Assembly (NCBI GenBank): GCA_002269645.1
Contig: NIVC01004073.1
Span: forward strand, 1-61,758
DNA: 61,758 nt
Direction: 5' to 3'
Source: Macrostomum lignano
Lineage: Eukaryota
Below, piece by piece: positions 445 to 55,548 of this stretch; the first letter of the stretch is position 1; each line of letters starts with the position of its first letter. Under the pieces are notes generated by a model. That model saw only the letters and a list, made by a program, of their open reading frames with translations, was not told where the DNA came from and did not search any database. The position numbers and the translations under genes were made by a program.

Positions 445-3412
445 TCAGATGTCGCCCTCGACTGAAGTAGAGTTATAAAACAGTCAAAACTGTGACATGT
501 GCGCTATTTATCTAGGAAACAGGCTGAATAAACTTACACAGCAATCGGGGATTGCGAAAGCAGACTCTGCTGCCGGCCGTGGGACAGGAAACCTTCAGAC
601 AGAAGGGCCGGTAGGCCTCCGCCGCCCCTGATGCAGACTGGACGGCCGCGATCGGCAGGCTGAGCAGCTCGTACTTGGACAGCCCGGCCCGAGGACCGCT
701 AGAATTAATATAAATGAGACTTTGCACTTGCTCTACAGACTACTATAAGTAAACAGGATTTTGTTAGAGATGGTTGGAAATTTTAAGCAATAAAGATAAA
801 CACGAAAGAATTGGGGCGATAGAAAATTCGAGGTTAGGAAGGGAGGAGCGTCTGAAGACAGGAAGAGGGGGCAGAGGACAGGAAGAGGTGATAAAAGACA
901 GGAAGAGAAGAGGGGACAGAGGACAGGAAGAGGTGATAAAAGACAGGAAGAGAAGAGGGACAGAGGACAGGAAGAGGTGATAAAAGACAGGAAGAGGGGA
1001 CAGAGGACAGGAAGAGGTGATAAAAGACAGGAAGAGGGACAGAGGACAGGAAGAGGTGATAAAAGACAGGAAGAGGGGACAGAGGACAGGAAGAGGTGAT
1101 AAAAGACAGGAAGAGGGGACAGAGGACAGGAAGAGGTGATAAAAGACAGGAAGAGGGGACAGAGGACAGGAAGAGGTGATAAAAGACAGGAAGAGGGGAC
1201 AGAGGACAGGAAGAGGTGATAAAAGACAGGAAGAGGGGACAGAGGACAGGAAGAGGTGATAAAAGACAGGAAGAGGGGACAGAGGACAGGAAGAGGTGAT
1301 AAAAGACAGGAAGAGGGGACAGAGGACAGGAAGAAGGTGATAAAAGACAGGAAGAGGGGACAGAGGACAGGAAGAGGTGATAAAAGACAGCAATTAAGTA
1401 GAGAAAACTCAAAATCAACATTTTAGTTTCTTAGACTTTTGCCAATGCATTTCGACCACAATCGGTCATCTTCAGGGCAGACACGTCAATTAATCACGCA
1501 GAACCATGTTATAGATATTTATTTAGGAAATGAAAACTGTACAATGCCAAGTGCAAATCAATTTCGGTCCAGTCCGGTTAACAAGAGAAAAAAAACCTGA
1601 ATAAAGTTCGACGAGACTGCCAACCTAGCTAAAACACATTGAGCTGGCGGCTTGCACCCCCATGGTTAACTGCTGTTCAAAATTGGTTTCTGAGCCTTAA
1701 TGTACATAGCCTCGAGAATGTTAAATTTGTTTTCTTTGCTACAAGAATCGATCACTTTAAACATATCACAACAGCTCTTATTGCAGCAGGAGTTGCACGT
1801 GAGAAGGTGCTCATTGATGGCAGAATTTCTAATCCAATGTTCCTTAACCCTTGTGTACAAGTGTCGCTTGGTTTTACCAATGTAGGAGATGTTCTGATCC
1901 ACAGAACAATGAAATTTATAGACGACACCTGCAACAAGTGGTCCAGGAACACGGGACTTCAACCTGCAGACAAACTGAGCAATCTTTTCCGTACGGAACA
2001 AAACCCGGAGCTGGAAATCAATGTGACTTCTAAATAAATTTTCCACTTTCTTCCCAAACTCCATGGAGCAGAGGCCTAAATAAGGCACCACAATAACGGG
2101 ACTACGATCATTACTGAGATCATTCTTCTTGAGTATGATTTTGACCAGAAAACTTCTTGCAGAGAAACCTATTAATGATGCCGGAAATATGGCCACGAGG
2201 GTATCCATTCATCATGAACAGCCGAGTAAGCTGCTCCAGCTCATCATGAAAAAGCTTCCAGACAAAAGACAGGAAGAAGTGACAGAAGATAGGAAGAGGG
2301 GACAGAAGACAGGAAGGAGCGACAGAAGACGGAAGAGGTGACAGAAGACAGGAAGAGGTGACAGAAGACAGGAAGAGGCGACAGAAGACAGGAAGAGGTG
2401 ACAGAAGACAGGAAGAGGGGACAGAAGACAGGAAGAGGGGACAGAAGACAGGAAGAGGTGACAGAAGACAGGAAGAGGTGACAAAAGACAGGAAGAGGTG
2501 ACAGAAGACAGGAAGAGGTGACAAAAGACAGGAAAAGGTGACAGAAGACAGGAAGAGGTGACAGAAGACAGGAAGGAGCGACAAAAGACAGGAACTGAAG
2601 CGACAGAAGACAGTGATGGCAAACAAAGAAGGAATGGTTATTGGGTCGGTTATCATAAAAGCACTCACTCTCCCAGGCACAGCTGGCACTGTCTCCATGT
2701 GAGCCACATCTGCCGATAATCTGTCTGGTTGAGCAGGCTGGGTGCATTGTTGTGCGCGACCACCTCAGGATCCAGAGTTGATCGCAGAATGCAGCGCGAG
2801 TTTCCGAAGGCACCAATAGTTGCCTCATAGTCAACCTATTAGGGGTAATGGACAGCTCATTCATTAACAACTTGGAAAAGTAAACTTGCATTAGCATCTA
2901 AATTTAACAACTCTTAAAAAAATAAAATTATTCCCACTAAAAAATAAATACTTTTATACATATTTAGTGTTATATTTATATGTTGAATTAAGGCCCTACC
3001 ATTTCCTGTGGTCCACAAAGAGAAATGACAGCATCTGAGAATCCTTTCACATCAAATAGCACACCAACACTATGCTTCACTTCGGTTGAGCGGCATAGAT
3101 AGTCTGGCGATTTCGATGCAATCACCTCTGAAATAAAAAAATCAATTTAAACTGTCATGTATAGTTGCAACTGTAAATATAAAAGTAAAAAGTAAAATTA
3201 CATCAAACAGTAAACTAAGAAGTCTTTGCCCCACTTCTATTGATTTCTAATTAACAAACCTACCGATTTTTTAAATTTTGACTTTCTAAATTTGTATATT
3301 TTTACTGGCTAGCTAGGATGGGCTGTTTGCATTCTGGAACTGATAATAGTTAGTAAAGAACATTGCACTTACCAATGTATTGAGAGACATTTCGAGAGGG
3401 TGAACAACCCAT
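445..3412 (-). CDS. FAMeT-like (Methyltransf_FA) single-domain protein, 5 exons, 170 aa, N-terminal MGCSPS
   Basis: Exons 3412-3373, 3127-3000, 2835-2669, 698-538 and 461-445 all have GT/AG ends and consistent phases. Translation: MGCSPSRNVSQYIEVIASKSPDYLCRSTEVKHSVGVLFDVKGFSDAVISLCGPQEMVDYEATIGAFGNSRCILRSTLDPEVVAHNNAPSLLNQTDYRQMWLTWRQCQLCLGDGPRAGLSKYELLSLPIAAVQSASGAAEAYRPFCLKVSCPTAGSRVCFRNPRLLFEGDI*. FDVKGFSDAVISL, YEATIGAFGNSRCILR and YRQMWLTW match the remembered FAMeT pattern FxVKAxxDAHIAL, YEVxIGGWxNxKSxIR, FRxFWIxW. Confidence 0.7.
845..1390. repeat. Purine-rich minisatellite, 40-bp unit made of two 20-bp subunits
   Basis: GACAGGAAGAGGTGATAAAA-GACAGGAAGAGGGGACAGAG repeated. It explains ORFs 764..1393, 774..980 and 834..1421. 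Confidence 0.95.
1391..2260 (-). mobile_element. 5'-truncated Penelope-like retroelement (RT C-terminus plus GIY-YIG endonuclease), frameshifted
   Basis: WKLFHDELEQLTRLFMMNGYPRGHISGIINRFL is the RT thumb region. After a frameshift near 2150 come VPYLG, GVVYKFHC...SYIGKTKRHLYTRVKEH...SAINEH and ILEAMYIKAQKPILN, the PLE GIY-YIG pattern. A hammerhead motif lies in the 3' UTR. Confidence 0.9.
1433..1487 (-). ncRNA. Minimal type I hammerhead ribozyme (PLE-type)
   Basis: The minus strand reads UGCC-CUGAAGA-U-GACC gauugu GGUC-GAAA-UGCAU-U-GGCA: core boxes, 4-bp stem II, palindromic AUGCAU stem III and UGCC/GGCA stem I. Confidence 0.65.
2261..2612. repeat. 20-bp minisatellite related to the 845-1390 array
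   Basis: GACAGAAGACAGGAAGAGGT repeated. Confidence 0.95.
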
Positions 3413-5630: not shown

Positions 5631-6110
5631 AAGCAGCAAGGGTGCCAGCCAGAGCAGCAGGGGTGCCAGCCAGAGCAGCAGGGGTGCCAGCCAGGGCAGC
5701 AGGGGTGCCAGCCAGGGCAGCAGGGGTGCCAGCCAGAGCAGCAAGGGTGCCAGCCAGAGCAGCAGGGGTGCCAGCCAGAGCAGCAGGGGTGCCAGCCAGA
5801 GCAGCAGGGGTGCCAGCCAGGGCAGCAGGGGTGCCAGCCAGAGCAGCAAGGGTGCCAGCCAGAGCAGCAGGGGTGCCAGCCAGAGCAGCAGGGGTGCCAG
5901 CCAGAGCAGCAGGGGTGCCAGCCAGAGCAGCAGGGGTGCCAGCCAGAGCAGCAAGGGTGCCAGCCAGAGCAGCAAGGGTGCCAGCCAGAGCAGCAGGGGT
6001 GCCATTCAGAGCAGCAGGGTGCCAGCCAGAGCAGCAGGGATGCCAGTCAGAGCAGCAAGGGTGCCAGCCAGAGCAGCAGGGGTGCCAGTTAGGACAGCAG
6101 CTCTGGCTGG
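5630..6110. repeat. 21-bp minisatellite
   Basis: CCAGCCAGAGCAGCAGGGGTG repeated. All six frames are open, which explains ORFs between 5460 and 6339. Confidence 0.95.
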
Positions 6111-6949
6111 CACCCTGAAAAATTTCAAAAAGAAAAATTTCTGATCGAACAGTGCAAGTTCGAAGAAAATCGGTCCAGCCGTTCGGGAGAAAATCGATTG
6201 CGCACAAGCAAACATACAAATAACTCATTTTTAGTGTATGGAAATGAAAAAAACTTGAAAAACTAATGCACATGTTTCGGTGTACAGAAGAAATGACTTG
6301 CAGTTTTGGGTCACTCCATGAGAAGGTATGCTCTACCATATCCCAGCCATAAAGTTTTTCGACAATTTCAGATAACTTCGACCGAGAGAATAGTAAAATT
6401 TATTTTGTGTGAAAGTTTTAGAAAATGTGTTTAACTCGACACGAGGATTTTTCACAGTAAATTTCAATTTAAATGACCAATTTAACACATTCGTTCCCGT
6501 TCATTCGACGTGTCTATCTTTAGAATTTGAATGGAAGCAATGAGCAACTGACGTGGTGATTGATCAATGATCAGCACAATGTTTTGCCTGATTTGCTAGT
6601 TGCTTGATTGCAGAGTTTCACTGTTAGGCCTTTGCTGTCAGGATTGGCACGCTGTATCAACTTCCGTTTTGTTAGTTAACGCGCCTCGGTATTATTATCC
6701 TTCTCCCGCAACTGGTCCCTAGGTTTGGCCTGGAACACCACCCACGCACAAATGATGACTTTGAATTGCGCGTGATTTTAAATCGGTTTCTTTAATCCGC
6801 TTCACAATTGTGTCTTAGTTGGTTGCTGAAACAAAATCTAAATTTTTCTTATCCTCTCCGGACTTCATCCAATCAAGTGTTGTGTGGCGCATTCGTGTGT
6901 CTTCCGAGCACGAGCTCAGTCCGACAAAGTTATGATTTCGCAGCTATCC

Positions 6950-7025
6950 GGCCTATCCAATCAGCTTTGCCGTTGAATTCTCTATAAAAATGGCAGCACG
7001 GTAGTCGCCGACACAGACGCCAGTC
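6950..7025 (+). promoter_or_regulatory. Putative core promoter of the prohormone-like gene
   Basis: CCAATCAG near 6957, TATAAAA at 6983-6989 and an initiator-like CCAGTC near 7020. A probable 5'UTR intron follows (GTAAGT near 7068, TTTCAG ending near 7153). Confidence 0.5.
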
Positions 7026-7194
7026 TGAAACTGTTGAGAATTGTCCTATTCTCTAAAGTGTCTTCTGGTAAGTGTCTGCTGGCTGTTCAACGTATTCTAA
7101 TAAGTGTTTTTCTACTAGCTGCAAGTTTACAAACCTGCTACTGACCATTTCAGATTCTTCAATATCGAAAGCGCTAACAAAAAGAAGCCAAATC

Positions 7195-7590
7195 ATGCTG
7201 AAGATTCGCGCCGCTTTTGTTGTCCTCCTGCTGACTGCCTGCGTGCTGGCCGGGTTAGTTTTAGTTTGATTTTGTTTATCTAGCATGTATTTTGTGTTGA
7301 AGACACCTGACTATGCAGTGCAATAAGTTGCATTTCTCAATTGCAGCAATTCCGTGTCCGGCAGCGAGGTCTCTAACAATCGGATCTGCCGTCTGATTGA
7401 GGCCATGGCTCGGGTGAGTCTCGGTGCCAGTCGGTTACAAAAGATCCCATATTCGCGCATGAAACATGCAGATTTTCTTGAACTTTTCTTAAACTTGCAG
7501 GTTGCGGACTGCGACTCCGTGCCAGCTGGCATCGACAATGTTTACCTGGGCAAGGCGCTGGAGAAACGCCGCGATCGATTCCGCGGCTGA
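7195..7590 (+). CDS. Secreted peptide prohormone / neuropeptide precursor candidate, 3 exons, 71 aa
   Basis: Exons 7195-7253, 7347-7413 and 7501-7590, with GT/AG introns of 93 and 87 nt and matching phases. Translation: MLKIRAAFVVLLLTACVLAGNSVSGSEVSNNRICRLIEAMARVADCDSVPAGIDNVYLGKALEKRRDRFRG*. It has a signal-peptide-like N-terminus, GK and KR sites and a terminal Gly. Confidence 0.7.
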
Positions 7591-9656
7591 TGGAACGTCA
7601 AAGCTGATTTGACCACAAGACTTGTTTTGTTTCTTCAACATTCTGCCCAGGAACTGAACTGTTCTAAGAATCCCTTCTATTTCCCGACTAAGTCTGTGTA
7701 TTTCGTTTTTTGAACTATCTATAACATTACACTTGAGTTTCTGGAGACTCGCTAGTGATTAGGAGAATGTTTTTTGAACGATATCAACTTTGACGATAAA
7801 AGCACAGCTTGTGATAAACTGAAACTACAAATATAATACACAATTATCGACTGGCTGAGTGAGTCTGTTGCTGACAGTTCTTCAACTGCCCGGTCGAAAG
7901 AGAGAGAGAGTTGTTAAATTGCAAACCATATAATATCTTCCTGTTTGGTCTTGGTTTTTTTACTATAATTGTAAAATCCTTGGTTAGGATCTTGGTCTGA
8001 TTGGACACTTGTCTTCTAGCTTGTTTGGCGTAGTCGATGCTTGTGGTCTAGCTCATTGAGCAATCTACAGTATAATAATGTATTTTGACAATCTTAAAGC
8101 AATTATTTGTCTTCTGTCAGAAGCGCTCTCGCCTACACAAATAATCTACGAAGTAGTTTAGCGTCTTTCAATCGCTATTGATGTGTAATCTTCTTAAGCA
8201 ACACTTTCTTCAGTGCCTTTTAACCAGTAGCATTTCAAATTTTCGTCAGTTAAAACAAAAAATATGCTTAAGGTGTGTGAAAGAGGCTAATGTTAATGTT
8301 AACAGGAGCTTGCGATGGCACAGGCATTGAACAGCAGGGATTGACGTTGGCATTCTTAACTATTTCTGCTGAGAACTGCGTCTTGGCGTTCTTGGTCGCA
8401 TTCAATCCAGCGAAGGTTATCGCTTCAATTCTATCTAGGAGCTGCTGTAATCCCACAACTAAGCCCTGTGCCTTATCATGCAGCTGCGGCGGCAGCTGAA
8501 CCCAAGCCTTGATCTCACTTCTATCGACTCAAAGCTTATCTGCGTGAGCTAAGGAATTAATCGACTTATCATTCGAAAATTACTTTTTTTCGAGTGAGAA
8601 AAAATGAGTTATTGCCTAGTTCAGTTGCAATTTTTTACTAGACTCATTTCCATTTTTTCGCTGCACCAGTTCTTGTACAAAAATAGTGTTGCAACACCGC
8701 TACAGGATCTACAAGTTAGTACTTGAATGTGTCATGTATCGTTGCTTCTGCACACGGCTCTTCTATGATGCATCCTGCACTGCGCTTATGGTTGTCATGC
8801 TTTACGACCTACTCAAAGATATAAGTCAACCGTTTTTACGATTGTAAACTTAAAAAGAAATGAGTTGCTCTTTAAGTTAATGCAGGTATATTGGTGTAAA
8901 GGCACTGAAATGGAACGTCATCCTATCTTCAGTTTTTAAATTCAAAATTCATGCGGCTTATTTATGGAAGTTTTTCATCTTACCAGACCAGACCTTAAGC
9001 TGACGAAGCTTTTGCTTCGGAAATTGCCTTCTTAATTCATTTGCTTTTTTTGCCGATCTGCTAAAACATGAGAATCTTTGGTCAAAGAAACTTGAGCCTT
9101 CGGGGAATTGCAGCTAATTTCCGTGCTAATTAGCACTGTCGAGTAGGATCGGAGCTGTGTTGGAGCGAGTCTTAAACCGCTTTGAGTTATTGTTGGCGCA
9201 GTATGGGGCGAGCAGAAATCCGTTTGATTCCGAAGTGGCTCCTTAATTTCCTTCTTTTTTTACTGAGGCAAGTACTGGAATTTTAATCCTGGATTTCCAC
9301 TGGTCCCTTGGGCATCGGCCTTATTATCCTCACATGATGAGATATGCATCGAGACGCGTTGGATTTATGCCAATTTCCTCCATCTTTTGCGAAGCAGATT
9401 AACCTCAGATTAGATCGATTTGGTCCGAGTCTGAATCCTTAGACCATCTACATTCGATTTTGTGCTAGAAAAGTGAATTTATTATATTTTTGTTGTTTTC
9501 CCTGAAAAAACTCAACTTTTATATGCTTTACAATGATGTAGAATAAATGCTTATCACAATAGTGACCCTTCTAATTGGCAAAACTTCAAAACTCCACCAA
9601 ATACAGATCAAATCACTGCAAGCAATTTCAGCCACCTGACCTATTCGCTCAGTAAA

Positions 9657-10827
9657 ATGTCGCTTGAAGCAATTCGCTACGCCAATGGCGAGCTGTCAAT
9701 TATTGATCAATTGCTTTTGCCGCATCAGACAGTGTACATTCGTATCGCCAGCTGTGAGGAAGCCTGGTCAGCTATTAAAAGGATGCAGGTGCGTAATTTT
9801 GTTACATTGCGTCTTGACATTGAGAGCATACAGCTGCATCTAATCTCTGGATTTCTCAGGTTCGTGGCGCCCCAGCCATTGGCATTGTTGGCAGCTTAGC
9901 CATGGCTGTAGAGCTGAAATCGCCGGACACCCTGTCTCAGGTGGACAGTTCGGCAAAATTGTCCGCCTGGTTAGGCGCCAAATGGGACCGACTGGTGTCG
10001 GCCCGTCCAACTGCCGTCAATCTGCAGGACAGCCGCGAACGGATGTTTCGCCTTCTATCCACCGACTGGTCAGCAATGGACGTAGCCGGTCAGCGTCTGG
10101 CCGCTGTGGAATGGCTGGAGTCGCAGCTGGAACAAGATGTCCGCTCCTGCCGAGCCATTGGAGAGGCTGGCGCCAATGCCCTACTACAAAGTGTCGAAGA
10201 GCGCGGCCTCGTACCGCCTGGTGGCCAAGTGAACGTGCTGACTCACTGCAACACGGGCTCTTTAGCCACCGGAGGCTACGGCACCGCACTAGGCGTTGTG
10301 CGCAGCCTGCACAATCGAGGGCGCTTAGGCCGGATATTCTGCACAGAGACTCGACCCTACAACCAGGGCGCCAGGCTCACAGCCTACGAAATCGTTGCTG
10401 ACGGGCTGCCGGGCACTCTAATCTGCGACAGCATGGTTGCCGCGGCCATGGCAAGCGGCCGAGTGCACGCTGTTGTCCTGGGTGCCGATCGGATCGTGTC
10501 CAACGGCGACACCGCGAACAAGATTGGCACCTATCAGATTGCCGTACTGGCTCGTCATCATTCCATACCGTTCTTCGTGGCGGCGCCTCTTACTAGCATT
10601 GATTTTAGCATGCGCACCGGTTCCGAGATCGTATCGAGGAGCGGCCGTCCGACGAGTTGGCCTGCGTTGCCGGCCAACGAATTGCTTGTCGCGGCATTGA
10701 CATCTGGAATCCGGCGTTCGACGTTACTCCGGCCGAGCTAATCACGGCCATAGTGACGGACACGGGCGTGGTGCCCCCAAATAATGTTGCAGCTCTGGCT
10801 AAGAAGCTGGGGGCCGAACAGGGCTGA
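9657..10827 (+). CDS. MRI1: Methylthioribose-1-phosphate isomerase, 2 exons, one apparent 1-nt deletion at about 10632
   Basis: Exon 9657-9788 ([10 protein letters not shown]...AIKRMQ), intron 9789-9859, then [17 protein letters not shown]-like [47 protein letters not shown] and [10 protein letters not shown]. After the frameshift comes IEERPSDEL...[19 protein letters not shown]. The restored protein is about 366 aa. Confidence 0.95.
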
Positions 10828-18298: not shown

Positions 18299-21200
18299 AT
18301 GTTGCAACTGCAGCAGAGAACCTGTGACTCGCCATTATCAATGGAGTCTCTAATTAAAAGTGGCTCATTGTCATCCGATGATAAGGAGTTTTTACAGCAG
18401 TTTTCTAATGATGCAAATATGAATGCAGTAGTGAAATTGTGCGACATTCTTGAAGGCTATCTGGCTAGACGAGTGGCTCCTGTCACGCCGAGCGCACTAG
18501 AGGATGTTGTCGAGGTGATTAATGCCATTTTTTTCTATTTGTATCGTGTGTTTCTTGATAAATTAGACATGTTTATAAACATATAGATTATTAACTCAAT
18601 GGCATTATCAGATTAGCTCATGTTTGCTAATCATGTCTATCACTCAGGTATCTGTTCCCTTAATTAGGCTATCGCCCAGGTGTCTACTCCCTAAGTAGAG
18701 TCTATCGTCCAGGCGTCTTCCCTAATAAGAGGCTATCGCCCAGGTGTCTGTTCCCTAATAAGAGGATATCGCCCAGGTGTCTGTTCCCTAATAAGAGGAT
18801 ATCGCCCAGGTGTCTGTTCCCTAATAAGAGGATATCGCCCAGGTGTCTGTTCCCTAATAAGAGGATATCGCCCAGGTGTCTGTTCCCTAATAAGAGGATA
18901 TCGCCCAGGTGTCTGTTCCCTAATAAGAGGATATCGCCCAGGTGTCTGTTCCCTAATAAGAGGATATCGCCCAGGTGTCTGTTCCCTAATAAGAGGATAT
19001 CGCCCAGGTGTCTGTTCCCTAATAAGAGGATATCGCCCAGGTGTCTGTTCCCTAATAAGAGGATATCGCCCAGGTGTCTGTTCCCTAATAAGAGGATATC
19101 GCCCAGGTGTCTGTTCCCTAATAAGAGGATATCGCCCAGGTGTCTGTTCCCTAATAAGAGGATATCGCCCAGGTGTCTGTTCCCTAATAAGAGGATATCG
19201 CCCAGGTGTCTGTTCCCTAATAAGAGGCTATCGCCCAGGTGTCTGTTCCCTAATAAGAGGCTATCGCCCAGGTGTCTGTTCCCTAATAAGAGGCTATCGC
19301 CCATGTGTCTGCTCCCTAATAGGCTTTCGCCCAGGTGTCTGCTCCCTAATAGGCTTTCGCCCAGGTGTCTGCTCCCCAATAGGCTTTCGCACAGGTGTCT
19401 GCTCCCTAATAGGCTTTCGCCCAGGTGTCTGCTCCCTAATACTGTTAGAGTCTTCCGCACAGGTGTCTGTTCTCTAATAGGCTTTTGCACAGGTTTCTAG
19501 CTTAGTAATTTTCACTAAGCCATTCGCAACTAGACAAAAGCAACCCCTCCGCCAGAAATAAAATAATTTGATATTCAAATTGCCTTGCGCATTGCCCAAA
19601 TCGCAGGCCTACGACTATTTGCGCTGCCATCCGCACGCCGAAGGCTGTCACGAATTGGTACATCTATTGCGCAAGCCGCATATGAAAGCCTTGATCCAGT
19701 GTCACGATGACCTAGCTAATCGTACCTACGGCCCTAGACTATCGCCTGTGCCTCACGAGGTCGATGAAGACGATGTTAGCGTGAAAATTGTCGAGTTGGT
19801 GAAGCAGGACGAGCCGCTAGGCGCCACTATTAAGATTAATGAGCGAACCGGGGCCATCCTCATCGCCCGGGTGATGCACGGAGGGCTGGCTGATCGCAGC
19901 GACCTGCTGCAGGCCGGGGACGAAGTTCAAGCTGTCAATCAGGTTTGACTGATCGGCATGTATCTTGGGGTCTGTCTGTTCACAGGTCTAGCTAGCGGGC
20001 AGATCAGTGAGGCATCTAGCTAGCGGGCAGATCAGTAATGCATCTAGCTAGCGGGCAGATCAGTGAGGCATCTAGCTAGCGGGCAGATCAGTAATGCATC
20101 TAGCTAGCGGGCAGATCAGTGAGGCATCTAGCTAGCGGGCAGATCAGTAATGCATCTAGCTAGCAGGCAGATCAGTGAGGCATCTAGCTAGCGGGCAGAT
20201 CAGTAATGCATCTAGCTAGCGGGCAGATCAGTGAGGCATCTAGCTAGCGGGCAGATCAGTAATGCATCTAGCTAGCGGGCAGATCAGTGAGGCATCTAGC
20301 TAGCGGGCAGATCAGTAATGCATCTAGCTAGCGGGCAGATCAGTGAGGCATCTAGCTAGCGGGCAGATCAGTGAGGCATCTAGCTAGCGGGCAGATCAGT
20401 AATGCATCTAGCTAGCGGGCAGATCAGTGAGGCATCTAGCTAGCGGGCAGATCAGTAATGCATCTAGCTAGCGGGCAGATCAGTGAGGCATCTAGCTAGC
20501 GGGCAGATCAGTGAGGCATCTAGCTAGCGGGTAGATCAGTGAGGCATCTAGCTAGCGGGTAGATCAGTGAGGCATCTAGCTAGCGGGCAGATCAGTGAGG
20601 CATCTAGCTAGCGGGTAGATCAGTGAGGCATCTAGCTAGCGGGCAGATCAGTGAGGCATCTAGCTAGCGGGCAGATCAGTGAGGCATCTAGCTAGCCGGT
20701 AGATCAGTGAGGCATCTAGCTAGCGGGCAGATCAGTGAGGCATCTAGCTAGCGGGCAGATCAGTGGTGGCCAAGTGTATTAAAATTTTTGTGTAATGAAA
20801 GGCTAATGCATTGGAAATTGGCATTTACTCATTCGCAGGTGCTAGTGGCCGGCCAGGACCCCATGACGGCTATTCGAATGCTGACCACCGCCCGTGGCAA
20901 CGTCCGACTCTCCGTACTGCCGTCTGAGCGCAGATCCTCGTCAACAGCTGGAGGCGTTGGGAGCGTCAGCAGCGGCGGACAGCAGCAAGTCGGTGTCAGT
21001 CCGGCCACCGTGCGAGTGCTATTCAACTACAACCCAGCGGATGACGGGCTCATACCGTGCCAAGAGGCTGGACTCTGTCTGCGGCTAGGCGACATCTTGC
21101 AGCTGGTTAATCGCGAGGACGGCGATTGGTGGCAGGCGATCAAGGAGGGCGACGCCAGGCGGCGAGCCGGTCTGGTGCCCAGCACGGATCTGCTGCTTCG

Positions 21201-22805
21201 GCGGTATCAAAAGCAGCAGCAGCTTCAACAACAGCAGCAGCAGCAGGGCCGAAGATCGAGTGTAAAGTCCACGGCGTCCTCGGCCACTTCGTCGCCTTCA
21301 TCTCCGGCAACGGCGCATCGAGGTTAGTGGAAGTGTGGCGAAGCTTGATTTCATTTTGTTAGGTGAAGATTTTTATAGCGCTTCTCAACTTCATGTATTT
21401 GTGTACAGCGGCCATGTGTAAGTGTATGTGTACACAAAGCCAAATAGAGATTTATGTGGGGCGAAACTCCCATGCACCCAGCGCCAACTAGGGATTATAG
21501 GGCGCCAAAATCCCATGCACCCAACGCCAACTAGGGATTATAGGGTGCCAAAATCCCATGCACCCAGCGCCAACTAGGGATTATAGGGCGCCAAAATCCC
21601 ATGCACCCAGCGCCAACTAGGGATTATGTGGCGCCAAAATCCTATGCACCCAGCGCCAACTAGGGATTATGTGGCGCCAAAATCCCATGCACTTAGCGCC
21701 AAATAGGGATTATAGGGCGCCAAAATCCCATGCACCCAACGCCAACTAGGGATTATAGGGCGCCAAAATCCCATGCACCCGGCGCCAACTAGGGATTATG
21801 TGGCGCCAAAATCCCATGCACCCAGCGCCAACTAGGGATTATGTGGCGCCAAAATCCCATGCACCCATCGCCAACTAGGGATTATGTGGCGCCAAAATCC
21901 CATGCACCCAGCGCCAACTAGGGTTTATGCGGCGCCAATTGGGCAAGTGTAGCGCCGATATGACACAGTCTAATTAACGAAAACTTCGCAGTTGATACTA
22001 CTAGTCACCTCGCTGTTAAGTAGCATGCTAAGCTATTTTTTACTATTTGTACTTTCTAAAAAAAGCAGACAGCTCCGGCTCCGACCAGCAGCAGCCGCCG
22101 CCGCAGTTCTACGAAGAGCTCGGCCGATTTTATCCCGGCCAGCCGGACGGCCCAACTGGTTCGCCTGTGCCGCCCTACCGGCCGCTAGTGCTGATCGGAC
22201 CGTCCGGTGTTGGCCGGCGAGAACTGGCCAGACAGCTGGTTGGCACGGATCGGGAACACTTTGCTCTGCCTGTGCTTGTCTCCACCCGATCTCAGCAGCG
22301 CCCGGAACCGTTCGTGTCTCTCACGGCTGCTCAAATCCGGGCCCTAGCCGAAGCCGGCCGCCTGGCCGAACAGTGGACAGAGGACGGCGGCAACGAGACC
22401 TGGGCTCTGCCAGTCGACTCGCTGACTAAACTGCTCCGCGATGGCCGCGTGCCAGTCTGCGTGCCGCACGGGCCGCCGCCTCACTGCCTACTGGGCCTGC
22501 GCACTCCGTCGCTTCGAGCTTTCGTTGTCTACGTTAAGCCGCCTCCGTTGGACGTGCTCAGAGAGACCAGGGCGCCGCATCTGCTGCAGCAGCAGGAGGA
22601 CAGCCTGTACGATACTGGGCGTCAGCTGACTCTGTCCGAACTCGAGGCCATGGTCATTGAGGGCCAGCGCATGGAGTCGGCATGCGCCCACCTGATCGAC
22701 TTTACCTTGGTTAATGACGATTTGCCAGTAGCGCTGGAGACTCTGTCTGAGCTGGCTTATCGATTGGAAACTGACTTCTCCTATGTGCCCAAGCACTGGC
22801 TATGA
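18299..22805 (+). CDS. MPP7: MAGUK p55 subfamily protein (L27-L27-PDZ-SH3-GK), MPP7-like, 4 exons, about 590 aa
   Basis: Exons 18299-18514, 19607-19942, 20839-21322 and 22069-22805 have consistent phases. PDZ: SVKIVELVKQDEPLGATIKINERTGAILIARVMHGGLADRS (MPP7-type). SH3: VRVLFNYNPADDGLIPCQEAGL...DWWQA...AGLVPS. GK: YRPLVLIGPSGVGRREL. The start codon could instead be 18341. Confidence 0.85.
18640..19480. repeat. 33-bp minisatellite in MPP7 intron 1
   Basis: ATCGCCCAGGTGTCTGTTCCCTAATAAGAGGAT repeated, shortening to 30-bp variants at the right end. Confidence 0.95.
19985..20765. repeat. 28-bp minisatellite in MPP7 intron 2
   Basis: TCTAGCTAGCGGGCAGATCAGT(GAGG/AATG)CA. The two variants alternate in the left part. 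Confidence 0.95.
21460..21940. repeat. 43-bp minisatellite in MPP7 intron 3
   Basis: GGCGCCAAAATCCCATGCACCCAGCGCCAACTAGGGATTATAG repeated. Confidence 0.95.
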
Positions 22806-23520: not shown

Positions 23521-24607
23521 AGGACCACTTCTTGTTTAAAAATGCAGCTTATATTTGTTACTGCTGTTACTAGTCTGAATACTGACTTTAGCTTATCATG
23601 CCTATACCAGAGCTTTTTTCGCTCAGTCTACAGCTTTAATTATTAATAATTTGAATTTCTGCACCCCCCTCTGCATTGTCTAGTCACATTAGTCTGAGTT
23701 GTAGCTTTTCTAGTTAATCATCAGTGTATTAACAATAAACTTGTTTTTACTGCAGTTAAAGTTTTATTAAGCAATTATGAGTGTATACATGTGTGTATTA
23801 TACATTGGCATTTGTTGTTGCATGCTGTACTTTGCAATATCGTTATTTTTGCTTCCAAGTTTTTTTATAATCACGCCTTGCTTGCATATTGTTGAATCTG
23901 ACAGTTAAAGAAATATGTACTAAATAACCGTATAGACTGGCTTTGTATATATTGTTGACTACTATTGGTTTTTATTCTATTTATTCTCTACGGCATGAAT
24001 TATGAGCTAACTTAATCCATGTTTTTAGGTATTTATGTACTAGGCTAATAATCAATAGTCATTAGTTGTTAAGAACTTTACCGTGACAAGAATCGCTAAA
24101 TATTGTCTGCAAACAACTCAGTAATGACTCTAGCGACTCTGGGGTGACTCCTTTGACTGTAATGCACACTGTTGAGTCACAAGCGCATCACTTGAGTTGT
24201 AGAATCGTAGAGTCGTCCAAGAGTCGCTGTGTTAGCGCTTAACTGTCTACTAACTCAAGTAGACTAAATGGAGTTGTTATCACGCCTCAAACTGACTCTT
24301 AGGCGACTCTTAGAAGACTTCTTGTCCTGTTTTACCTGTGTTACCTTCAACGACACTGGGTCTCGACGCAATTGAATCTAGGAGGCTTCCTGGCCTAAGT
24401 ACCAGAATATATCGATGAATCAAAGAATAGGGCTTAACTAGCTATTTTCTATTGCTAATTGGAAATTGGAAATTCTGAGCTCATTATTTGCGTACTTTTG
24501 CTCCCTGAAGGGGGGTGAATTGCTAGTCTAATATACTAAAAATGAAAATCTTGAACTCAATACAAAGCATTCATAATTTGTTTTTGCATGCTGAAAAACC
24601 GCCAGCC

Positions 24608-24973
24608 ATGTCTAGCGAGGACAGCCCCGCCCCAGTGTCCTCTGTCGGGCCGGAAGTGGACGCTCTATCAATGAAAGCGGCCCTATCTAGCGCGCCTACA
24701 ACCGGACACTATATGGCCGGCATGACAGCTGTGGCCTGGCTGTGCCGCAATGCTTATTTAAAAGCGCCCTGGTTCTACCAGCTGCCGCAGGGTCTGGTTG
24801 GCACAGCCGCTGTGTTTACCGCCGGCTATTTGCTAGACGTGTACTGGAATAATGAGCTCAAAATGCGAGCCGCCTACGTGGCCGACTTCAAGCGAACTCA
24901 CCCGGAGCTTTACCCGGAGACCAGGCGGCTGCGCTGGGGCGAGGTGCTCGATCCTTGGGTGCCGAAGCGTTAA
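24608..24973 (+). CDS. NDUFC2: NADH dehydrogenase 1 subunit C2 (B14.5b), intronless, 121 aa
   Basis: Two hydrophobic segments and the C-terminus RAAYVADFKRTHPELYPETRRLRWGEVLDPWVPKR, matching the NDUFC2 pattern YxxLHPExFP...YGExxxxxxPxR. Confidence 0.8.
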   Translation: MSSEDSPAPVSSVGPEVDALSMKAALSSAPTTGHYMAGMTAVAWLCRNAYLKAPWFYQLPQGLVGTAAVFTAGYLLDVYWNNELKMRAAYVADFKRTHPELYPETRRLRWGEVLDPWVPKR

Positions 24974-25970: not shown

Positions 25971-26054
25971 TAATAGTAGTATATATGAGAAAACTACCAC
26001 AACTCTCCCGTTTATTATATTTTTATGTTTGCAACTTGCTCTCACAAATCAGCC

Positions 26055-26453
26055 ATGCAGGTTAGCAACAAGCTCGGTGCACTGCTAACAGCTGTAACTG
26101 CCGCAGTGTTTGTTTCCAGCTGCCTAGCCAATACCCACAACGCCATCCTTGGCGGCTGGAGCCAGATGAAGCAGTCTGATATGGATAGCGACGTATTTCG
26201 CGAGTGCCTGGATGCAGCTGCCGCTGAGTACAACGCCCGGCTAGCTTCATCTGATGGAGATTCCAGTGTGAAAGCTACCGTAGGCCGAGTGAGCCAGGCC
26301 CAGCAGCAGGTGGTGTCTGGAATGAAGTACAAATTTAAGGCTAGTATGACTGTGCCCGGCTGCGACTCCTGCGAGGACAGGAGCTGCGAATTTGTAGTCT
26401 GGTATCGCGCCTGGATGCCGGAGCGAGCCAAGGTGCTTAGCGTGAATTGTTAA
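26055..26453 (+). CDS. Secreted cystatin (cysteine protease inhibitor), intronless, 132 aa
   Basis: Signal-peptide-like N-terminus, LGGW, QVVSG reactive loop, C-terminal cysteines and WYRAW in place of the PW loop. Confidence 0.85.
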   Translation: MQVSNKLGALLTAVTAAVFVSSCLANTHNAILGGWSQMKQSDMDSDVFRECLDAAAAEYNARLASSDGDSSVKATVGRVSQAQQQVVSGMKYKFKASMTVPGCDSCEDRSCEFVVWYRAWMPERAKVLSVNC

Positions 26454-31376: not shown

Positions 31377-34197
31377 ATCTCCGAAGCTTCATGTCTCTGT
31401 AAGGGTTAAAAGTTATGCTTAGGGTTAGGGTTAGGGTTTGTCGGAGATATGAAGTGTCCGGGATATGTTGTGTCGGAGATATGAAGTGTCGGAGATATGA
31501 AGTGTCGAAGATATGAAGTGTCGAAGATATGAAGTGTCGGCGATATAAAGTGTCGGAGATATTAAGTGTCCGGGATGAAGTGTCGGAGATATGAAGTGTC
31601 CGGGATATGTTGTGTCGGAGATATGAAGTGTCGGAGATATGAAGTGTCGGAGATATGAAGTGTCGGAGATGTGAAGTGTCGGAGATCGAAGTGTCGGAGA
31701 TATGAAGTGTCGGAGATATGAAGTGTCGGAGATATGAAGTGTCGGAGATATGAAGTGTCAAAGAGATATGAAGTGTCGGAGAGATGAAGTGTCCGGGATA
31801 TGTTGTGTCGGAGAGATGAAGTGTCCGGGATATGTGTCGGAGAGATGAAGTGTCCGGGATATGTTGTGTCCGAGAGATGAAGTGTCCGGGATATGAAGTG
31901 TCGGAGATATGAAGTGTCCGGGATATGAAGTGTCGGCGATATAAAGTGTCGGAGATATGAAGTGTCCGGGATATGAAGTGTCGGAGATATGAAGTGTCCG
32001 GGATATGAAGTGTCGGCGATATAAAGTGTCGGAGATATGAAGTGTCCGGGATATGAAGTGTCGGCGATATGAAGTGTCCGGGATATGAAGTGTCGGAGAT
32101 ATGAAGTGTCCGGGATATGAAGTGTCGGAGATATGAAGTGTCCGGGATATGAAGTGTCGGAGATATGAAGTGTCCGGGATATGTGTCGGAGATATGAAGT
32201 GTCGGCGATATGAAGTGTCGGAGATATGAAGTGTCCGGGATATGTTGTGTCGGAGAAATGAAGTGTCCGGGATATGAAGTGTCGGCGATATAAAGTGTCG
32301 GAGATATGAAGTGTCCGGGATATGAAGCGTCCGAGAGATGAAGTGTCCGGGATATGAAGTGTCGGAGATATGAAGTGTCCGGGATATGAAGTGTCGGCGA
32401 TATAAAGTGTCGGAGATATGAAGTGTCCGGGATATGAAGTGTCCGAGAGATGAAGTGTCCGGGATATGAAGTGTCGGGTGTGAAGTCTCGGGGATATGAA
32501 GAGTCCGGGATATAAAGTGTCGGAGATATGAAGTGTCGGAGATCTGAAGTGTCGGAGATATGAAGTGTCGGAGATATGAAGTGTCGGAGATATGAAGTGT
32601 CGGAGATATGAAGTGTCAAAGAGATATGAAGTGTCGGAGATATGAAGTGTCAAAGAGATATGAAGTGTCGGAGATATGAAGTGTCGGCGACATAAAGTGT
32701 CGGAGATATGAAGTGTCCGGGATATGTTGTGTCGGAGATATGAAGTGTCGGCGATATGAAGTGTCCGGGATATGTTGTGTCGGAGATATGAAGTGTCTGG
32801 GATATGTTGTGTCGGAGAGATAAAGTGTCCGGGATATGAAGTGTCGGAGAGATGAAGTGTCGGGTGTGAAGTCTCGGGGATATGAAGTGTCCGGGACATA
32901 AAGTGTCGGGGATATGAAGTGTCCGGAATATAAAGTGTCCGGAATATGAAGTGTCGGCGGCGATATGAAGTGTCGGAGAGATGAAGTGTCGGAGATATGA
33001 AGTGTCGGAGATATGAAGTGTCGGAGATATGAAGTGTCCGGGATATGAAGTGTCGGAGATATGAAGTGTCGGCGATATGAAGTGTCGGAGAGATGAAGTG
33101 TCCGGGATATGTTGTGTCGGAGAGATGAAGTGTCCGGGATATGTGTCGGAGAGATGAAGTGTCCGGGATATGTGTCGGAGAGATGAAGTGTCCGGGATAT
33201 GTTGTGTCCGAGAGATGAAGTGTCCGGGATATGAAGTGTCGGAGATATGAAGTGTCCGGGATATGAAGTGTCGGAGATATGAAGTGTCCGGGATATGAAG
33301 TGTCGGCGATATAAAGTGTCGGAGATATGAAGTGTCCGGGATATGAAGTGTCGGCGATATGAAGTGTCCGGGATATGAAGTGTCGGAGATATGAAGTGTC
33401 CGGGATATGAAGTGTCGGAGATATGAAGTGTCCGGGATATGAAGTGTCGGAGATATGAAGTGTCCGGGATATGTGTCGGAGATATGAAGTGTCGGCGATA
33501 TGAAGTGTCGGAGATATGAAGTGTCCGGGATATGTTGTGTCGGAGAGATGAAGTGTCCGTGATATGAAGTGTCGGCGATATAAAGTGTCGGAGATATGAA
33601 GTGTCCGGGATATGAAGCGTCCGAGAGATGAAGTGTCCGGGATATGAAGTGTTGGAGATATGAAGTGTCCGGGATATGAAGTGTCGGCGATATAAAGTGT
33701 CGGAGATATGAAGTGTCCGGGATATGAAGTGTCGGAGATATGAAGTGTCCGGGATATGAAGTGTCGGAGATATGAAGTGTCCGGGATATGTGTCGGAGAT
33801 ATGAAGTGTCCGGGATATGTGTCGGAGATATGAAGTGTCGGCGATATGAAGTGTCGGAGATATGAAGTGTCCGGGATATGTTGTGTCGGAGAGATGAAGT
33901 GTCCGGGATATGAAGTGTCGGCGATATAAAGTGTCGGAGATATGAAGTGTCCGGGATATGAAGTGTCCGAGAGATGAAGTGTCCGGGATATGAAGTGTCG
34001 GAGATATGAAGTGTCCGGGATATGAAGTGTCGGCGATATAAAGTGTCGGAGATATGAAGTGTCCGGGATATGAAGTGTCGGAGATATGAAGTGTCCGGGA
34101 TATGAAGTGTCGGCGATATGAAGTGTCGGAGAGATGAAGTGTCCGGAATATGAAGTGTCGGGTATGTGAAGTGTCAGCGATATGAAGTATCGGAGAT
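31377..34197. mobile_element. Foldback-like element filled with a ~16-bp-unit satellite
   Basis: The left 23 bp ATCTCCGAAGCTTCATGTCTCTG matches the reverse complement of the right end (ATCTCCGATACTTCATATCGCTG) at 19/23 positions. (TTAGGG)3 lies near 31419-31436, followed by about 2.75 kb of GATATGAAGTGTC(GGA/CGG) units. No TSD was seen. It explains the 926-aa and 443-aa ORFs. Confidence 0.6.
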
Positions 34198-41200: not shown

Positions 41201-42213
41201 CTCTTTCTTTCTTTTTTATATCCAATGAAACTTTGCCCTCTTAATTTATAGATAATCAAAAACCGCCACTCAATTCGCTAGCGACGGGGGCTATAGCCAC
41301 TGCACCGCAGTCATGCCCATTCTGTAGATCCCTGAGCATGCATAAAGAACTGGGATTCGTACTCAGCTCACGGCACTGTCTATATTGGCACTGTCTGTCA
41401 TACAGGGTGAGCAGAGGTACCCTAAACCTAACCCTAACCCTAACCCTAACCCTAACCCTAACCCTAACCCTAGCCCCAACCCTAACCCTAACCCTTACCC
41501 TAGCCACTCCCACACTATTGCTCAGCAATGAGGTGCGGCCGCTCACCAATCGTGGTGATCACGGTCACCACGTACAGCAGCGCGCCGGAGAAGCTCCAGT
41601 TGAGATCGGCGTCATCGTAGCGGCCGTTCCAGCCGTCATCAGTCAGCCGCTTGATCAGCTGCCGGCTGAACTCGCGCATCTGGGCGGCGAATCGCCGTTC
41701 AAAGTCCTGCACGGCTGCCGCCGCCTGCGAGGACATGTTGCCGGCTGCCCCGTCTGCCGCCGCCGCTGCCAGAGCGACGTTGGTCTGACTGGAGTTCCAC
41801 CGACGCAGCCACCGTTGAGCCTCGTCGAGCAGCTGGCCGCTGACATTTTTCACGGTGCTGTCCAGGTGGTCTCTGGCGGCGGCCTTCACTCGCAACTCGT
41901 CGCCCTGCTCAAGCCGACGGAACAGCTCGCCGCCAATGATGACGTACAGAATAATGAGGCTGGACAGGCCCAGATTGGAGAACATGAATGCCAGGAAATG
42001 CTTGCAGCAGGTCACCGTCTCTTTGATTCGCTTCTTTCGACGCTGCCGACGGGCGTGCCGCCTCCGCTGCGACTTGGTGTTGTCGGCTGTCGAGGTCATA
42101 GCGGTCATGTTGATGGGGGCGGAGCGCTGGCTCTGCATCGGGGCCCGCACGGTGGGCCGCACTGTCGGGCGGGACATCTGCGGCCTCGGCCGCGGCGGCT
42201 GACTGAGCTCCAT
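35204..42213 (-). CDS. TWiK-family two-pore-domain potassium channel (K2P), 3 exons, about 780 aa
   Basis: Exons 42213-41547, 37868-36495 and 35505-35204 are joined by phase-1 introns. P1 is WSFSGALLYVVTVITTIG|YG and M2 is LYAFFGIPL. P2 is YFCFITLSTIGFGDIVPG and M4 is FYVAIGLSVFAMCFKLMQE. Confidence 0.93.
38885..39330. repeat. 21-bp minisatellite in K2P intron 1
   Basis: ACTGTGAATCTCTCTGCTGAC repeated about 21 times. Confidence 0.97.
40470..41085. repeat. Pyrimidine-rich 11-bp-based repeat (CTTCTCACTCC)n
   Basis: Visible tandem units. It explains ORFs between 40430 and 41244. Confidence 0.93.
41421..41505. repeat. Interstitial telomeric repeat (CCCTAA)n
   Basis: About 14 mostly perfect CCCTAA units. 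Confidence 0.95.
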
Positions 42214-42976: not shown

Positions 42977-43813
<837 letters not shown>

Positions 43814-45004: not shown

Positions 45005-45389
45005 GCCACAGTATTGGCCGGTAAAATAGAGCAACAGAGTCCAGCTTCTGTTCCCGAGCCCTGTCAGCTCATTAGAGATGGCGCAGTGAAAAATTGTAGT
45101 TTTGTAAAAATCTCCACAAATCTAATTGAGCTTCTTGGCGCGTGAAACCCTCCAAAATTAGCGATATTTGAAACTGAAATTTTCCCAGTGCCAACTCTAT
45201 ATCGAATTTCTACCTTAATTAATTAGGACCTTGAAAACCGGAAGATGTTTCCGTGAGAGAAAATTTGAACTCGAAGGACTCGAACTTGATCTGGCTCTGA
45301 AAAGTTTTCGGTAGATTTGGAAACAGAGAAATTAATTGTTGTGGCGCTAAAATATTATATGTTAGCACCTAAATAGTCTATTTTAGCGC

Positions 45390-55200: not shown

Positions 55201-55548
55201 TAGTATGGGTGGCGACCCCCAGTCCCTGGACTGAACAGCCGTACGCAGCCTTCAGATGCGCGCGCAATAGCTGCGGCTGAGCTGTCGGTTGCACATCTGG
55301 CCATTAGGACAGTTGTAATGAAGTAATAATAATTGCAGCAGAGTTTTGGTCACTCTGGTGCGTCCCACAACCAGCACTGAGACGATTCTGCTCATTCTGC
55401 TGGCTCCTGAGCACATGCAAGCGCGCCAATGCTGTATGCAGACACGCACTCATGCACTGTACAGCGATCCCGACTATGTAATCGTGGTGTCGCGAGAGTC
55501 AGACATGTTCAAGGCTGCTACTCGACCATATACTCAAGCGAAACAGCC

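What the first reader, a model, noticed from the sequence alone, without database searches (positions are those of the whole stretch)
6950..7590. Hidden three-exon gene for a candidate novel neuropeptide precursor ending KR-RDRFR-G-stop
Seen: TATA and CCAAT boxes, a 5'UTR intron, three in-phase coding exons and a hydrophobic signal-like N-terminus. Established processing rules (dibasic cleavage, Gly-dependent amidation) predict RDRFR-amide. A second, larger peptide ending NVYL-amide (before GK) could carry a Cys-X11-Cys loop. I do not recognise the family, so it may be a new peptide signalling system (inference).
Basis: partly seen in the sequence, partly recalled or inferred. Interest (0 to 1): 0.7.

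Follow-up and report, generated by a model that had tools for sequence, protein, structure and literature searches.

The report
Annotated flatworm small secreted-peptide gene
The three-exon gene is real, but it is already annotated in the Macrostomum lignano genome as a 71-residue hypothetical secreted protein, and its reading as a new neuropeptide precursor is plausible but untested.

Summary
The window is the whole contig NIVC01004073.1 of the flatworm Macrostomum lignano. The described gene is there exactly as stated. It has a CCAAT box (6957), a TATA box (6983), a GT-AG intron in the 5'UTR (7068-7153) and three coding exons (7195-7253, 7347-7413, 7501-7590). The product is 71 aa, with a signal-peptide-like N-terminus, two Cys 11 residues apart, a KRR site and the end RDRFRG-stop.

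It is not hidden. GenBank already holds this exact protein (PAA48720.1, BOX15_Mlig028683g2). A 99%-identical second genomic copy encodes PAA51565.1, which UniProt names "Secreted protein". That annotation was built from RNA-seq.

No relative was found by word-index search, full HMMER, Pfam, NCBIfam or the PDB. A control shows these databases lack other Macrostomum species, so "orphan" is not established.

The protein meets the in-silico criteria used for planarian prohormones. A validated planarian prohormone (Smed-spp-13) also ends KR-peptide-Gly-stop. However, the KR...G-end pattern arises in 1-4% of random 52-mers. There is no conservation, expression or peptide evidence either way.

NVYL-amide at a lone Lys is unlikely. 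The candidate is worth a bench test but is not a discovery.

The parts
6957..6961 (+). CCAAT box
   Evidence: Motif located. It lies 26 bp upstream of the TATA box and is identical in the second genomic copy.
6983..6989 (+). TATA box (TATAAAA)
   Evidence: The expected transcription start is about 25-30 bp downstream, near 7010-7015 (inferred, not measured).
7012..7067 (+). Putative non-coding first exon (5'UTR); its 5' end is inferred
   Evidence: Ends at the consensus donor CTG|GTAAGT. It contains no AUG.
7068..7153 (+). 5'UTR intron, 86 nt, GT-AG
   Evidence: It carries most of the differences between the two genomic copies: 3 substitutions, a 6-bp indel and a 1-bp indel. The acceptor at 7153 could instead be a spliced-leader trans-splice site; this was not tested.
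7154..7194 (+). 5'UTR part of the second exon
   Evidence: The start-codon context is CAAATCATGC, with A at -3.
7195..7253 (+). Coding exon 1 (M1 to the first two bases of the G20 codon): the signal peptide
   Evidence: GC is 0.61 and Kyte-Doolittle hydropathy peaks at 3.07 over residues 9-17. It coincides with the start of the annotated gene.
7254..7346 (+). Intron 1, 93 nt, splits a codon after its second base
   Evidence: GTTAGT...TTGCAG ends and GC 0.33. Retention would hit a stop codon at once.
7347..7413 (+). Coding exon 2 (last base of the G20 codon to R42): N-terminal propeptide with Cys34
   Evidence: GC is 0.58. The only coding difference from the second copy is here (7396 A/G, Ile37Val).
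7414..7500 (+). Intron 2, 87 nt, lies between codons
   Evidence: GTGAGT...TTGCAG ends and GC 0.43. Its length is a multiple of three and it has no in-frame stop, so retention would add 29 residues.
7501..7590 (+). Coding exon 3 (V43-G71 plus TGA): Cys46, G59-K60, K64-R65-R66, RDRFRG-stop
   Evidence: GC is 0.62. Its end coincides with the end of the annotated gene.
7591..7850 (+). Probable 3'UTR (extent not established)
   Evidence: No AATAAA or ATTAAA lies within 1 kb of the stop. Variant hexamers are GATAAA at 7795 and 7813 and AATATA at 7830.

Best explanation
This is a genuine M. lignano gene, already annotated as Mlig028683.g2 (GenBank PAA48720.1). It encodes a 71-residue pre-protein that enters the secretory pathway.

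The most likely mechanism has four steps.
1. Signal peptidase cuts after Ala19 (VLA|GN) and releases a pro-protein of about 52 residues.
2. Cys34 and Cys46 form one disulfide.
3. A PC2-type convertase cuts at K64-R65-R66, and carboxypeptidase trims the basic residues.
4. The final Gly71 is used by the amidating enzyme.

This would give a 43-44-residue disulfide-looped peptide (G20/N21 to E63) and a very short amidated C-terminal peptide, RDRFR-NH2 or DRFR-NH2. On this reading the gene is a prohormone-type precursor of secreted signalling peptides.

Shown: the gene structure, the reading frame, identity to a transcript-based public gene model, the secretory-type N-terminus, and the presence of the sites.

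Inferred: every processing step, the disulfide, and any signalling role.

My probabilities: real expressed coding gene about 0.9; secreted product about 0.8; convertase-processed signalling-peptide precursor about 0.35-0.4; RDRFR/DRFR-amide as a bioactive product about 0.15.
For: Gene:
- The exact 71-aa product and the range 7195-7590 are in the public annotation. That annotation was derived from RNA-seq with StringTie, TACO and TBONE (PMC5730564).
- The splice sites are canonical, and exon GC exceeds intron GC, with GC3 0.72 like neighbouring genes.
- ATG 7195 is the first AUG of the leader and has A at -3.
- A second genomic copy with intact structure sits between the same neighbour genes.

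Secretion:
- The N-terminus has an n-region with K3 and R5, a hydrophobic core at residues 6-19, and VLA|G.
- UniProt names the sister copy 'Secreted protein'.

Prohormone-like features:
- It meets the criteria of Collins et al. 2010: a signal sequence, basic sites flanking the peptides, under 200 aa, and no similarity to non-prohormone genes.
- Planarian prohormones cloned from cDNA and expressed in the nervous system end the same way. Smed-spp-13 ends ...KRFRGLLG-stop, and spp-11 and spp-15 end ...G-R-stop.
- M. lignano has a pc2 homologue whose knock-down gives a strong phenotype (PMC4490696).
Against: - There is no evidence of conservation. The only relative is a 99%-identical copy that is equally similar in introns, so it carries no selection signal (Fisher p = 0.70). 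The single coding difference between the copies is non-synonymous.
- The KR...G-end pattern occurs in 3.9% of shuffles of the mature sequence and 1.3% of average-composition 52-mers. With about 44,000 non-redundant genes, chance examples are expected.
- There is only one candidate amidated peptide, and it is 4-5 residues long and mostly Arg. No repeated peptide copies are present.
- No expression site or peptide data were found. The identifier is absent from the supplements of five M. lignano papers and from full-text search.
- No transcript-derived contig carrying this protein is on record in the assembly collection.
- No canonical poly(A) signal lies within 1 kb of the stop.
- AlphaFold2 gives only low-confidence helices (pLDDT 55).
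Confidence: 0.38

Rival explanations
1. It is a small secreted protein that is not convertase-processed. The roughly 52-residue product, with one disulfide and a cationic C-terminal tail, would act as such. Possible roles are a gland secretion, an antimicrobial or defence peptide, or a reproductive or adhesive-gland product. The KRR and terminal Gly would then be incidental parts of a basic helix.
For: - The signal peptide and small size fit this equally well.
- The mature part has pI 8.9, and 6 of its last 12 residues are basic.
- AlphaFold2 places KRR inside a predicted helix at residues 55-70, although at low confidence.
- The pattern arises by chance in 1.3-3.9% of sequences.
- TATA-box promoters are typical of any strongly tissue-specific secretory gene (my own knowledge).
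Against: - KR and RR sites in a secretory protein are usually cut wherever convertases are present.
- The exact KR-short peptide-Gly-stop layout recurs in validated planarian prohormones.
- The identifier is absent from the held supplementary lists of testis-, ovary-, tail-, germline- and neoblast-enriched genes. This is weak evidence, because long files may have been truncated when stored.
Confidence: 0.35
2. It is a young, lineage-restricted transcript with an open reading frame and little or no function. The ORF may be weakly translated or untranslated, and its prohormone look would be coincidence.
For: - No homologue appears in 1.84 billion representative proteins at E <= 0.001. There are no matches in Pfam or NCBIfam.
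- The only coding difference between the two copies is non-synonymous.
- No canonical poly(A) signal is present.
- The identifier appears in no expression list searched.
Against: - The elevated exon GC and GC3 of 0.72 match real genes in the window and contrast with the introns. This is hard to explain without coding constraint or long-standing translation.
- The gene has three precisely spliced coding exons, a good signal peptide, a TATA/CCAAT promoter, and an A at -3 of the start codon.
- The lack of homologues is uninformative. A conserved control protein (NDUFC2) also found only M. lignano copies.
Confidence: 0.15
3. It is a diverged member of an already named neuropeptide family, with similarity too short to score. 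Candidates are the planarian spp-14 family (NGLDIDDLFM-amide and TYL-amide), PDF/cerebrin, or NPF/NPY (RXRF-amide).
For: - Residues 53-60, IDNVYLGK, align without gaps to IDDLFMGK of Smed-spp-14, just before its amidation and cleavage site. The match is 4 identical plus 4 conservative out of 8 (BLASTP E = 0.089 for the single comparison).
- R-D-R-F resembles the R-X-R-F end of NPF (for the family's features).
Against: - An E of 0.089 for one pair is not significant once about 50 planarian prohormones are considered.
- Here the Gly-Lys is followed by Ala, not by a second basic residue.
- In NPF the Phe is followed directly by Gly and the peptide follows the signal peptide. Here Phe is followed by Arg-Gly, there is no intron in the Arg codon, and a disulfide is present.
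- No Pfam neuropeptide family matches, even at E <= 10.
- Motif words from this protein are absent from the planarian and schistosome prohormone supplements.
Confidence: 0.08

Closest known systems
Planarian 'secreted peptide prohormones' (Smed-spp genes of Collins et al. 2010), especially Smed-spp-13 (BK007029)
   Same: Both are small flatworm pre-proteins (78 aa versus 71 aa) with a signal peptide. Both have a long N-terminal spacer peptide and a last peptide bounded by KR upstream. In both, a Gly that is the very last residue of the precursor (…KR-FRGLLG-stop versus …KRR-DRFRG-stop) implies C-terminal amidation. The candidate also meets the same operational criteria.
   Different: There is no sequence similarity. 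spp-13 carries two copies of its peptide and no Cys pair. spp-13 was cloned from cDNA and shown to be expressed in the brain and nerve cords, and nothing of that kind exists for this gene.
Smed-spp-14 (BK007030; NGLDIDDLFM-amide and TYL-amide)
   Same: An eight-residue stretch ending in Gly-Lys is similar (IDNVYLGK versus IDDLFMGK). The aromatic-Leu/Met-Gly end also resembles TYL-Gly.
   Different: The similarity is not statistically significant. spp-14 uses canonical G-K-R sites and repeated copies. Here the Lys stands alone, so amidated ...NVYL is unlikely to be released.
NPF/NPY family
   Same: The C-terminal tetrapeptide R-D-R-F fits R-X-R-F/Y. The gene is a small secretory precursor.
   Different: The Phe is followed by Arg-Gly rather than Gly, so no RF-amide can form. 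The conserved intron inside the Arg codon is missing. A disulfide is present, and there is no Pfam match.
Luqin/RYamide-type precursors (from my own knowledge, not tested)
   Same: These are single-peptide precursors that also carry a conserved pair of Cys about 10 residues apart in the non-amidated part.
   Different: In luqin precursors the amidated peptide directly follows the signal peptide and the Cys pair is C-terminal. Here the order is reversed, and the amidated end is Arg-amide rather than RF/RY/RW-amide.

Membership tests
Flatworm prohormone (operational definition of Collins et al. 2010, PMC2953531) | N-terminal signal sequence | tested here: met
   Hydropathy and the -3/-1 rule (VLA|G after residue 19) fit. 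UniProt names the 99%-identical copy 'Secreted protein'. SignalP itself was not available.
Flatworm prohormone (operational definition of Collins et al. 2010, PMC2953531) | Basic cleavage sites flanking predicted or MS-confirmed peptides | tested here: met
   K64-R65-R66 precedes (R)DRFR-Gly-stop. This is by prediction only, with no MS data.
Flatworm prohormone (operational definition of Collins et al. 2010, PMC2953531) | Shorter than 200 residues and no similarity to genes annotated as something else | tested here: met
   The protein is 71 aa. There were no hits in Pfam or NCBIfam at E <= 10. HMMER against 1.84 billion representatives returned only the protein itself. The best PDB hit had E = 1.3, which is chance level.
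Flatworm prohormone (operational definition of Collins et al. 2010, PMC2953531) | Gene prediction verified by cDNA | tested here: inconclusive
   The public gene model comes from an RNA-seq-guided annotation and equals my model. I could not see the reads or a cDNA, and no transcript contig is on record.
Neuropeptide / peptide hormone in the strict sense | Expression in neurons or endocrine cells, mature processed peptides detected, and a receptor or bioactivity | not testable with these tools
   The identifier was not found in full text or in the supplements of five M. lignano expression papers.
Neuropeptide / peptide hormone in the strict sense | Cleavage and amidation sites conserved in orthologues | tested here: inconclusive
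   Only a 99%-identical copy from the same genome is available. A control shows that the database lacks other Macrostomum species.
NPF/NPY | C-terminal R-X-R-F/Y followed directly by Gly (amide), a 36-40-aa peptide right after the signal peptide, and an intron within the Arg codon | tested here: not met
   The end is R-D-R-F-R-G-stop. No intron lies in exon 3. There is no Pfam hit.
FMRFamide-like / RFamide peptides | Arg-Phe-Gly followed by a basic site or stop | tested here: not met
   The sequence reads Arg-Phe-Arg-Gly-stop. The predicted amide is Arg-NH2.
PDF / cerebrin | A peptide of about 17-20 aa preceded by a dibasic site, an internal Leu-Pro, and a C-terminal amide (features recalled from my own knowledge) | tested here: not met
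   No basic site lies before residues 47-53. There is no Leu-Pro and no Gly before KRR. No Pfam match was found.
Smed-spp-14 family | Significant sequence similarity of the precursor or its peptides | tested here: inconclusive
   There is an 8-residue ungapped match with BLASTP E = 0.089 for one comparison. It is not significant after allowing for the number of precursors compared.

The most novel reading that the evidence does not exclude
The gene founds a Macrostomum- or macrostomorph-restricted peptide signalling system. One precursor would yield a 43-44-residue peptide with a Cys-X11-Cys loop and an Arg-amide tetra- or pentapeptide ((R)DRFR-NH2). Neither product would belong to any described bilaterian neuropeptide family.
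Probability: 0.2. Interest if true: 0.45.

Novelty: new member of a known kind. Interest (0 to 1): 0.22.

Why it matters
If the prohormone reading is right, M. lignano would gain a lineage-specific signalling peptide. This is the one flatworm with stable transgenesis, so the peptide could be studied with reporters, RNAi and receptor pairing. It would also add to the picture of fast turnover in flatworm neuropeptide repertoires.

As it stands, the gene is one of many uncharacterised small secreted proteins in a genome with about 44,000 non-redundant genes. The gene model itself is not new. The practical value of this check is to correct "hidden", to narrow the plausible products, and to state the cheap tests that would decide the question. 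The plausible products are the 43/44-mer plus (R)DRFR-NH2, not NVYL-amide.

Tried and rejected
Homology and structure searches
- The word-index homology search found only the protein itself. Full HMMER over 1.84 billion representatives also found only itself.
- Pfam and NCBIfam gave no hits at E <= 10.
- The best PDB sequence hit was ribosomal protein eL30, with 14 of 30 residues identical and E = 1.3. I rejected it as chance: there is no Pfam L7Ae match, and by my recollection identity to metazoan eL30 is only about 30%.
- AlphaFold2 on the single sequence gave pLDDT 55, too low for a fold search, so none was run.
- The JGI metagenome scan matched 600 patterns, but none was confirmed.

Other sequence tests
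- I compared the two genomic copies to look for purifying selection. They are 99% identical in exons and introns alike, so the comparison is uninformative.
- No Rfam match lies in 6000-9000.
- Two scripts failed because a locus file was not yet available. They were replaced.

Literature
- The identifier Mlig028683 is absent from full text and from the supplements of PMC5816591, PMC5946080, PMC12896417 and PMC7336406.
- One motif search for 'YLamide' and similar terms was swamped by 'acrylamide' and was wasted.
- Searches for spp-14, TYLamide and single-cell data gave nothing useful.
- Koziol 2016 and McVeigh 2009, the main flatworm neuropeptide catalogues, are not held.
- Four- and five-residue words of the protein are absent from the planarian and schistosome prohormone supplements. 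The exceptions are RFRG in spp-13 and DRFR in Sma-npp-27, neither in a comparable position.

Families considered and rejected: NPF/NPY, RFamide and PDF/cerebrin (see the membership tests).

Full report
**Origin of the window.** An exact-sequence look-up of the spliced product shows that the window is the complete 61,758-bp contig NIVC01004073.1 of the Macrostomum lignano assembly GCA_002269645.1. [quoted passage not shown]

**The observation.** I rebuilt the gene model from the sequence.
- Promoter: CCAAT at 6957 and TATAAAA at 6983.
- Leader: a non-coding first exon ends at the consensus donor CTG|GTAAGT (7067/7068). An 86-nt intron ends at CATTTCAG (7153).
- Start codon: ATG at 7195 has A at -3. 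It is the first AUG downstream of the expected start site. The only other ATG abuts the TATA box at 6990.
- Coding exons: 7195-7253, 7347-7413 and 7501-7590, separated by introns of 93 and 87 nt with GT-AG ends.
- Coding signal: the exons are 58-62% GC with GC3 0.72. That matches the well-supported genes of the same window (GC3 0.60-0.69). The introns and flanks are 33-43% GC.
- Product: the 216-nt CDS encodes MLKIRAAFVVLLLTACVLAGNSVSGSEVSNNRICRLIEAMARVADCDSVPAGIDNVYLGKALEKRRDRFRG.

**The gene is not hidden.** The same 71 residues are GenBank PAA48720.1 / UniProt A0A267DHD2, "hypothetical protein BOX15_Mlig028683g2". The annotated gene spans exactly 7195-7590. A second copy, Mlig028683g1 (PAA51565.1 / A0A1I8I5P2, which UniProt names "Secreted protein"), lies on contig NIVC01003400.1. 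It sits between the same neighbours, a Methyltransf_FA-domain gene upstream and an IF-2B-family gene downstream. The Mlig_3_7 annotation was produced from RNA-seq by genome-guided transcript assembly with StringTie, TACO and TBONE (PMC5730564). The model therefore rests on spliced transcripts, although I could not inspect the reads. No transcript-derived contig carrying this protein is on record in the assembly collection.

**What the two copies tell us.** They are 99% identical over 1.2 kb, in introns as much as in exons. There is 1 substitution in 216 coding positions against 10 in 977 non-coding positions (Fisher p = 0.70). The one coding change is Ile37Val. The copies are too recent to show selection for or against the reading frame. 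They are homeologues or haplotypes of this neopolyploid genome.

**Homology.** Nothing was found.
- The word-index search returned only the protein itself.
- Full HMMER against 1.84 billion representatives returned only itself at E <= 0.001.
- Pfam and NCBIfam gave no hits at E <= 10.
- The best PDB hit was a 30-residue stretch of ribosomal protein eL30 at E = 1.3, which is chance level.
- A metagenome scan confirmed nothing.

To calibrate this silence I ran a control. The conserved mitochondrial protein NDUFC2, encoded at 24542-24973, also retrieved only the two M. lignano copies from the 5.8-billion-protein index. That index evidently lacks other Macrostomum species and missed other flatworms too. 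The full HMMER search had no such control. A 50-residue peptide also cannot reach significance at distant relationships in a library of that size. "I do not recognise the family" therefore stands, but "new family" is not shown.

**Protein features.** Residues 1-19 have the n-, h- and c-regions of a signal peptide: K3 and R5, then a hydrophobic core peaking at 3.07 on the Kyte-Doolittle scale, then VLA|G. The remaining part of about 52 residues has pI 8.9. It has two Cys (34 and 46, i.e. C-X11-C), one Gly-Lys (59-60), a tribasic K64-R65-R66, and the end D-R-F-R-G-stop. AlphaFold2 without an alignment gives only low-confidence helices at 30-43 and 55-70 (pLDDT 55), so I ran no fold search.

**Evidence for a prohormone.**
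- The protein meets the criteria that Collins et al. used for planarian prohormones. These are a signal sequence, basic sites flanking the peptides, under 200 aa, and no similarity to other genes.
- The unusual-looking end has a direct precedent. Smed-spp-13 ends ...KR-FRGLLG-stop, and spp-11 and spp-15 end ...G-R-stop. All three were cloned from cDNA and are expressed in the brain and nerve cords.
- M. lignano has a pc2 homologue with a strong RNAi phenotype.

**Evidence against, or limits.**
- The pattern "dibasic, 3-20 residues, Gly at the end" occurs in 3.9% of shuffles of the mature sequence. It occurs in 1.3% of average-composition 52-mers. In a genome with about 44,000 non-redundant genes, chance cases are expected.
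- Only one candidate amidated peptide exists. It has 4-5 residues and is mostly Arg.
- No expression or peptide data could be found.

Releasing ...NVYL-amide needs cleavage after Lys60. That is a lone Lys followed by Ala, with no basic residue at P4, P6 or P8. By the usual rules for monobasic sites (my own knowledge) this is improbable. The same applies to Arg32. The likelier large product is therefore the 43/44-mer G20/N21-E63. One weak lead points the other way. IDNVYLGK aligns without gaps to IDDLFMGK, the end of NGLDIDDLFM-amide in Smed-spp-14 (4 identical and 4 conservative of 8). However, BLASTP E = 0.089 for that single pair is not significant once about 50 precursors are considered.

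**Known families considered.**
- NPF/NPY is not met. It requires R-X-R-F-Gly, a peptide directly after the signal peptide, and an intron in the Arg codon. Here the sequence is R-F-R-G with no such intron.
- RFamides are not met, because the predicted amide is Arg-NH2.
- PDF/cerebrin is not met. There is no upstream basic site, no Leu-Pro, and no Gly before KRR.
- Luqin-type precursors share a Cys pair, but in the reverse order (from memory, not tested).

**Verdict.**
- The gene is real (about 0.9) and its product is probably secreted (about 0.8), but it is already annotated.
- The neuropeptide-precursor reading is a reasonable hypothesis at roughly 0.35-0.4. It is about level with the reading of an unprocessed small secreted protein (0.35).
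- A functionless young ORF is a lesser possibility (0.15).
- Nothing here is surprising to a specialist. It is a candidate for the standard pipeline of orthologue check, in situ hybridisation, peptidomics and RNAi.

Noticed in passing
window 7414-7500: Intron 2 of the gene is 87 nt, a multiple of three, and has no in-frame stop. Retaining it would keep the frame and give a 100-residue isoform with 29 extra residues between Arg42 and Val43. Retaining intron 1 would terminate at once.
   Followed up: partly
L002 (NIVC01003400.1) 9506-10706 and beyond; window about 2200-25000: A second copy of the locus is 99% identical in exons and introns and has the same neighbours. The duplicated block reaches at least as far as the NDUFC2 gene, whose sister copy lies on the same 99.7-kb contig. 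This fits the recent whole-genome duplication or the haplotypes of M. lignano.
   Followed up: partly
window 1666-2208 (-): An ORF with a GIY-YIG nuclease domain (Pfam E = 2.3e-06) is flanked by 20/40-bp minisatellites at 855-1390 and 2261-2613. It may be a remnant of a Penelope-like retroelement.
   Followed up: no
window 9902-10741 (+), 19568-22805 (+), 24542-24973 (+), 26025-26453 (+), 36391-37878 (-) and 41515-42213 (-): Other genes in the window, by Pfam: an IF-2B-family exon (methylthioribose-1-phosphate isomerase-like); a MAGUK p55-like gene with L27, PDZ, SH3 and guanylate-kinase exons; NDUFC2; a single-exon secreted cystatin-domain protein; and exons of a two-pore-domain K+ channel.
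   Followed up: partly
window, e.g. 31439-34197, 42980-43813, 55543-56304, 44166-45006, 45386-46427: Micro- and minisatellite arrays are unusually dense, with more than 25 arrays scoring above 400. They include a 2.8-kb array of a 16-bp unit, (AGAT)208 and (ACAG)191. Many of the long 'ORFs' in a six-frame listing are artefacts of these arrays.
   Followed up: no
window 7347-7590, protein residues 35-64: A 30-residue ungapped similarity (14 identities) to residues 57-86 of a Trichomonas ribosomal protein eL30 (PDB 5xy3 chain c) has E = 1.3. I judged it to be chance.
   Followed up: partly
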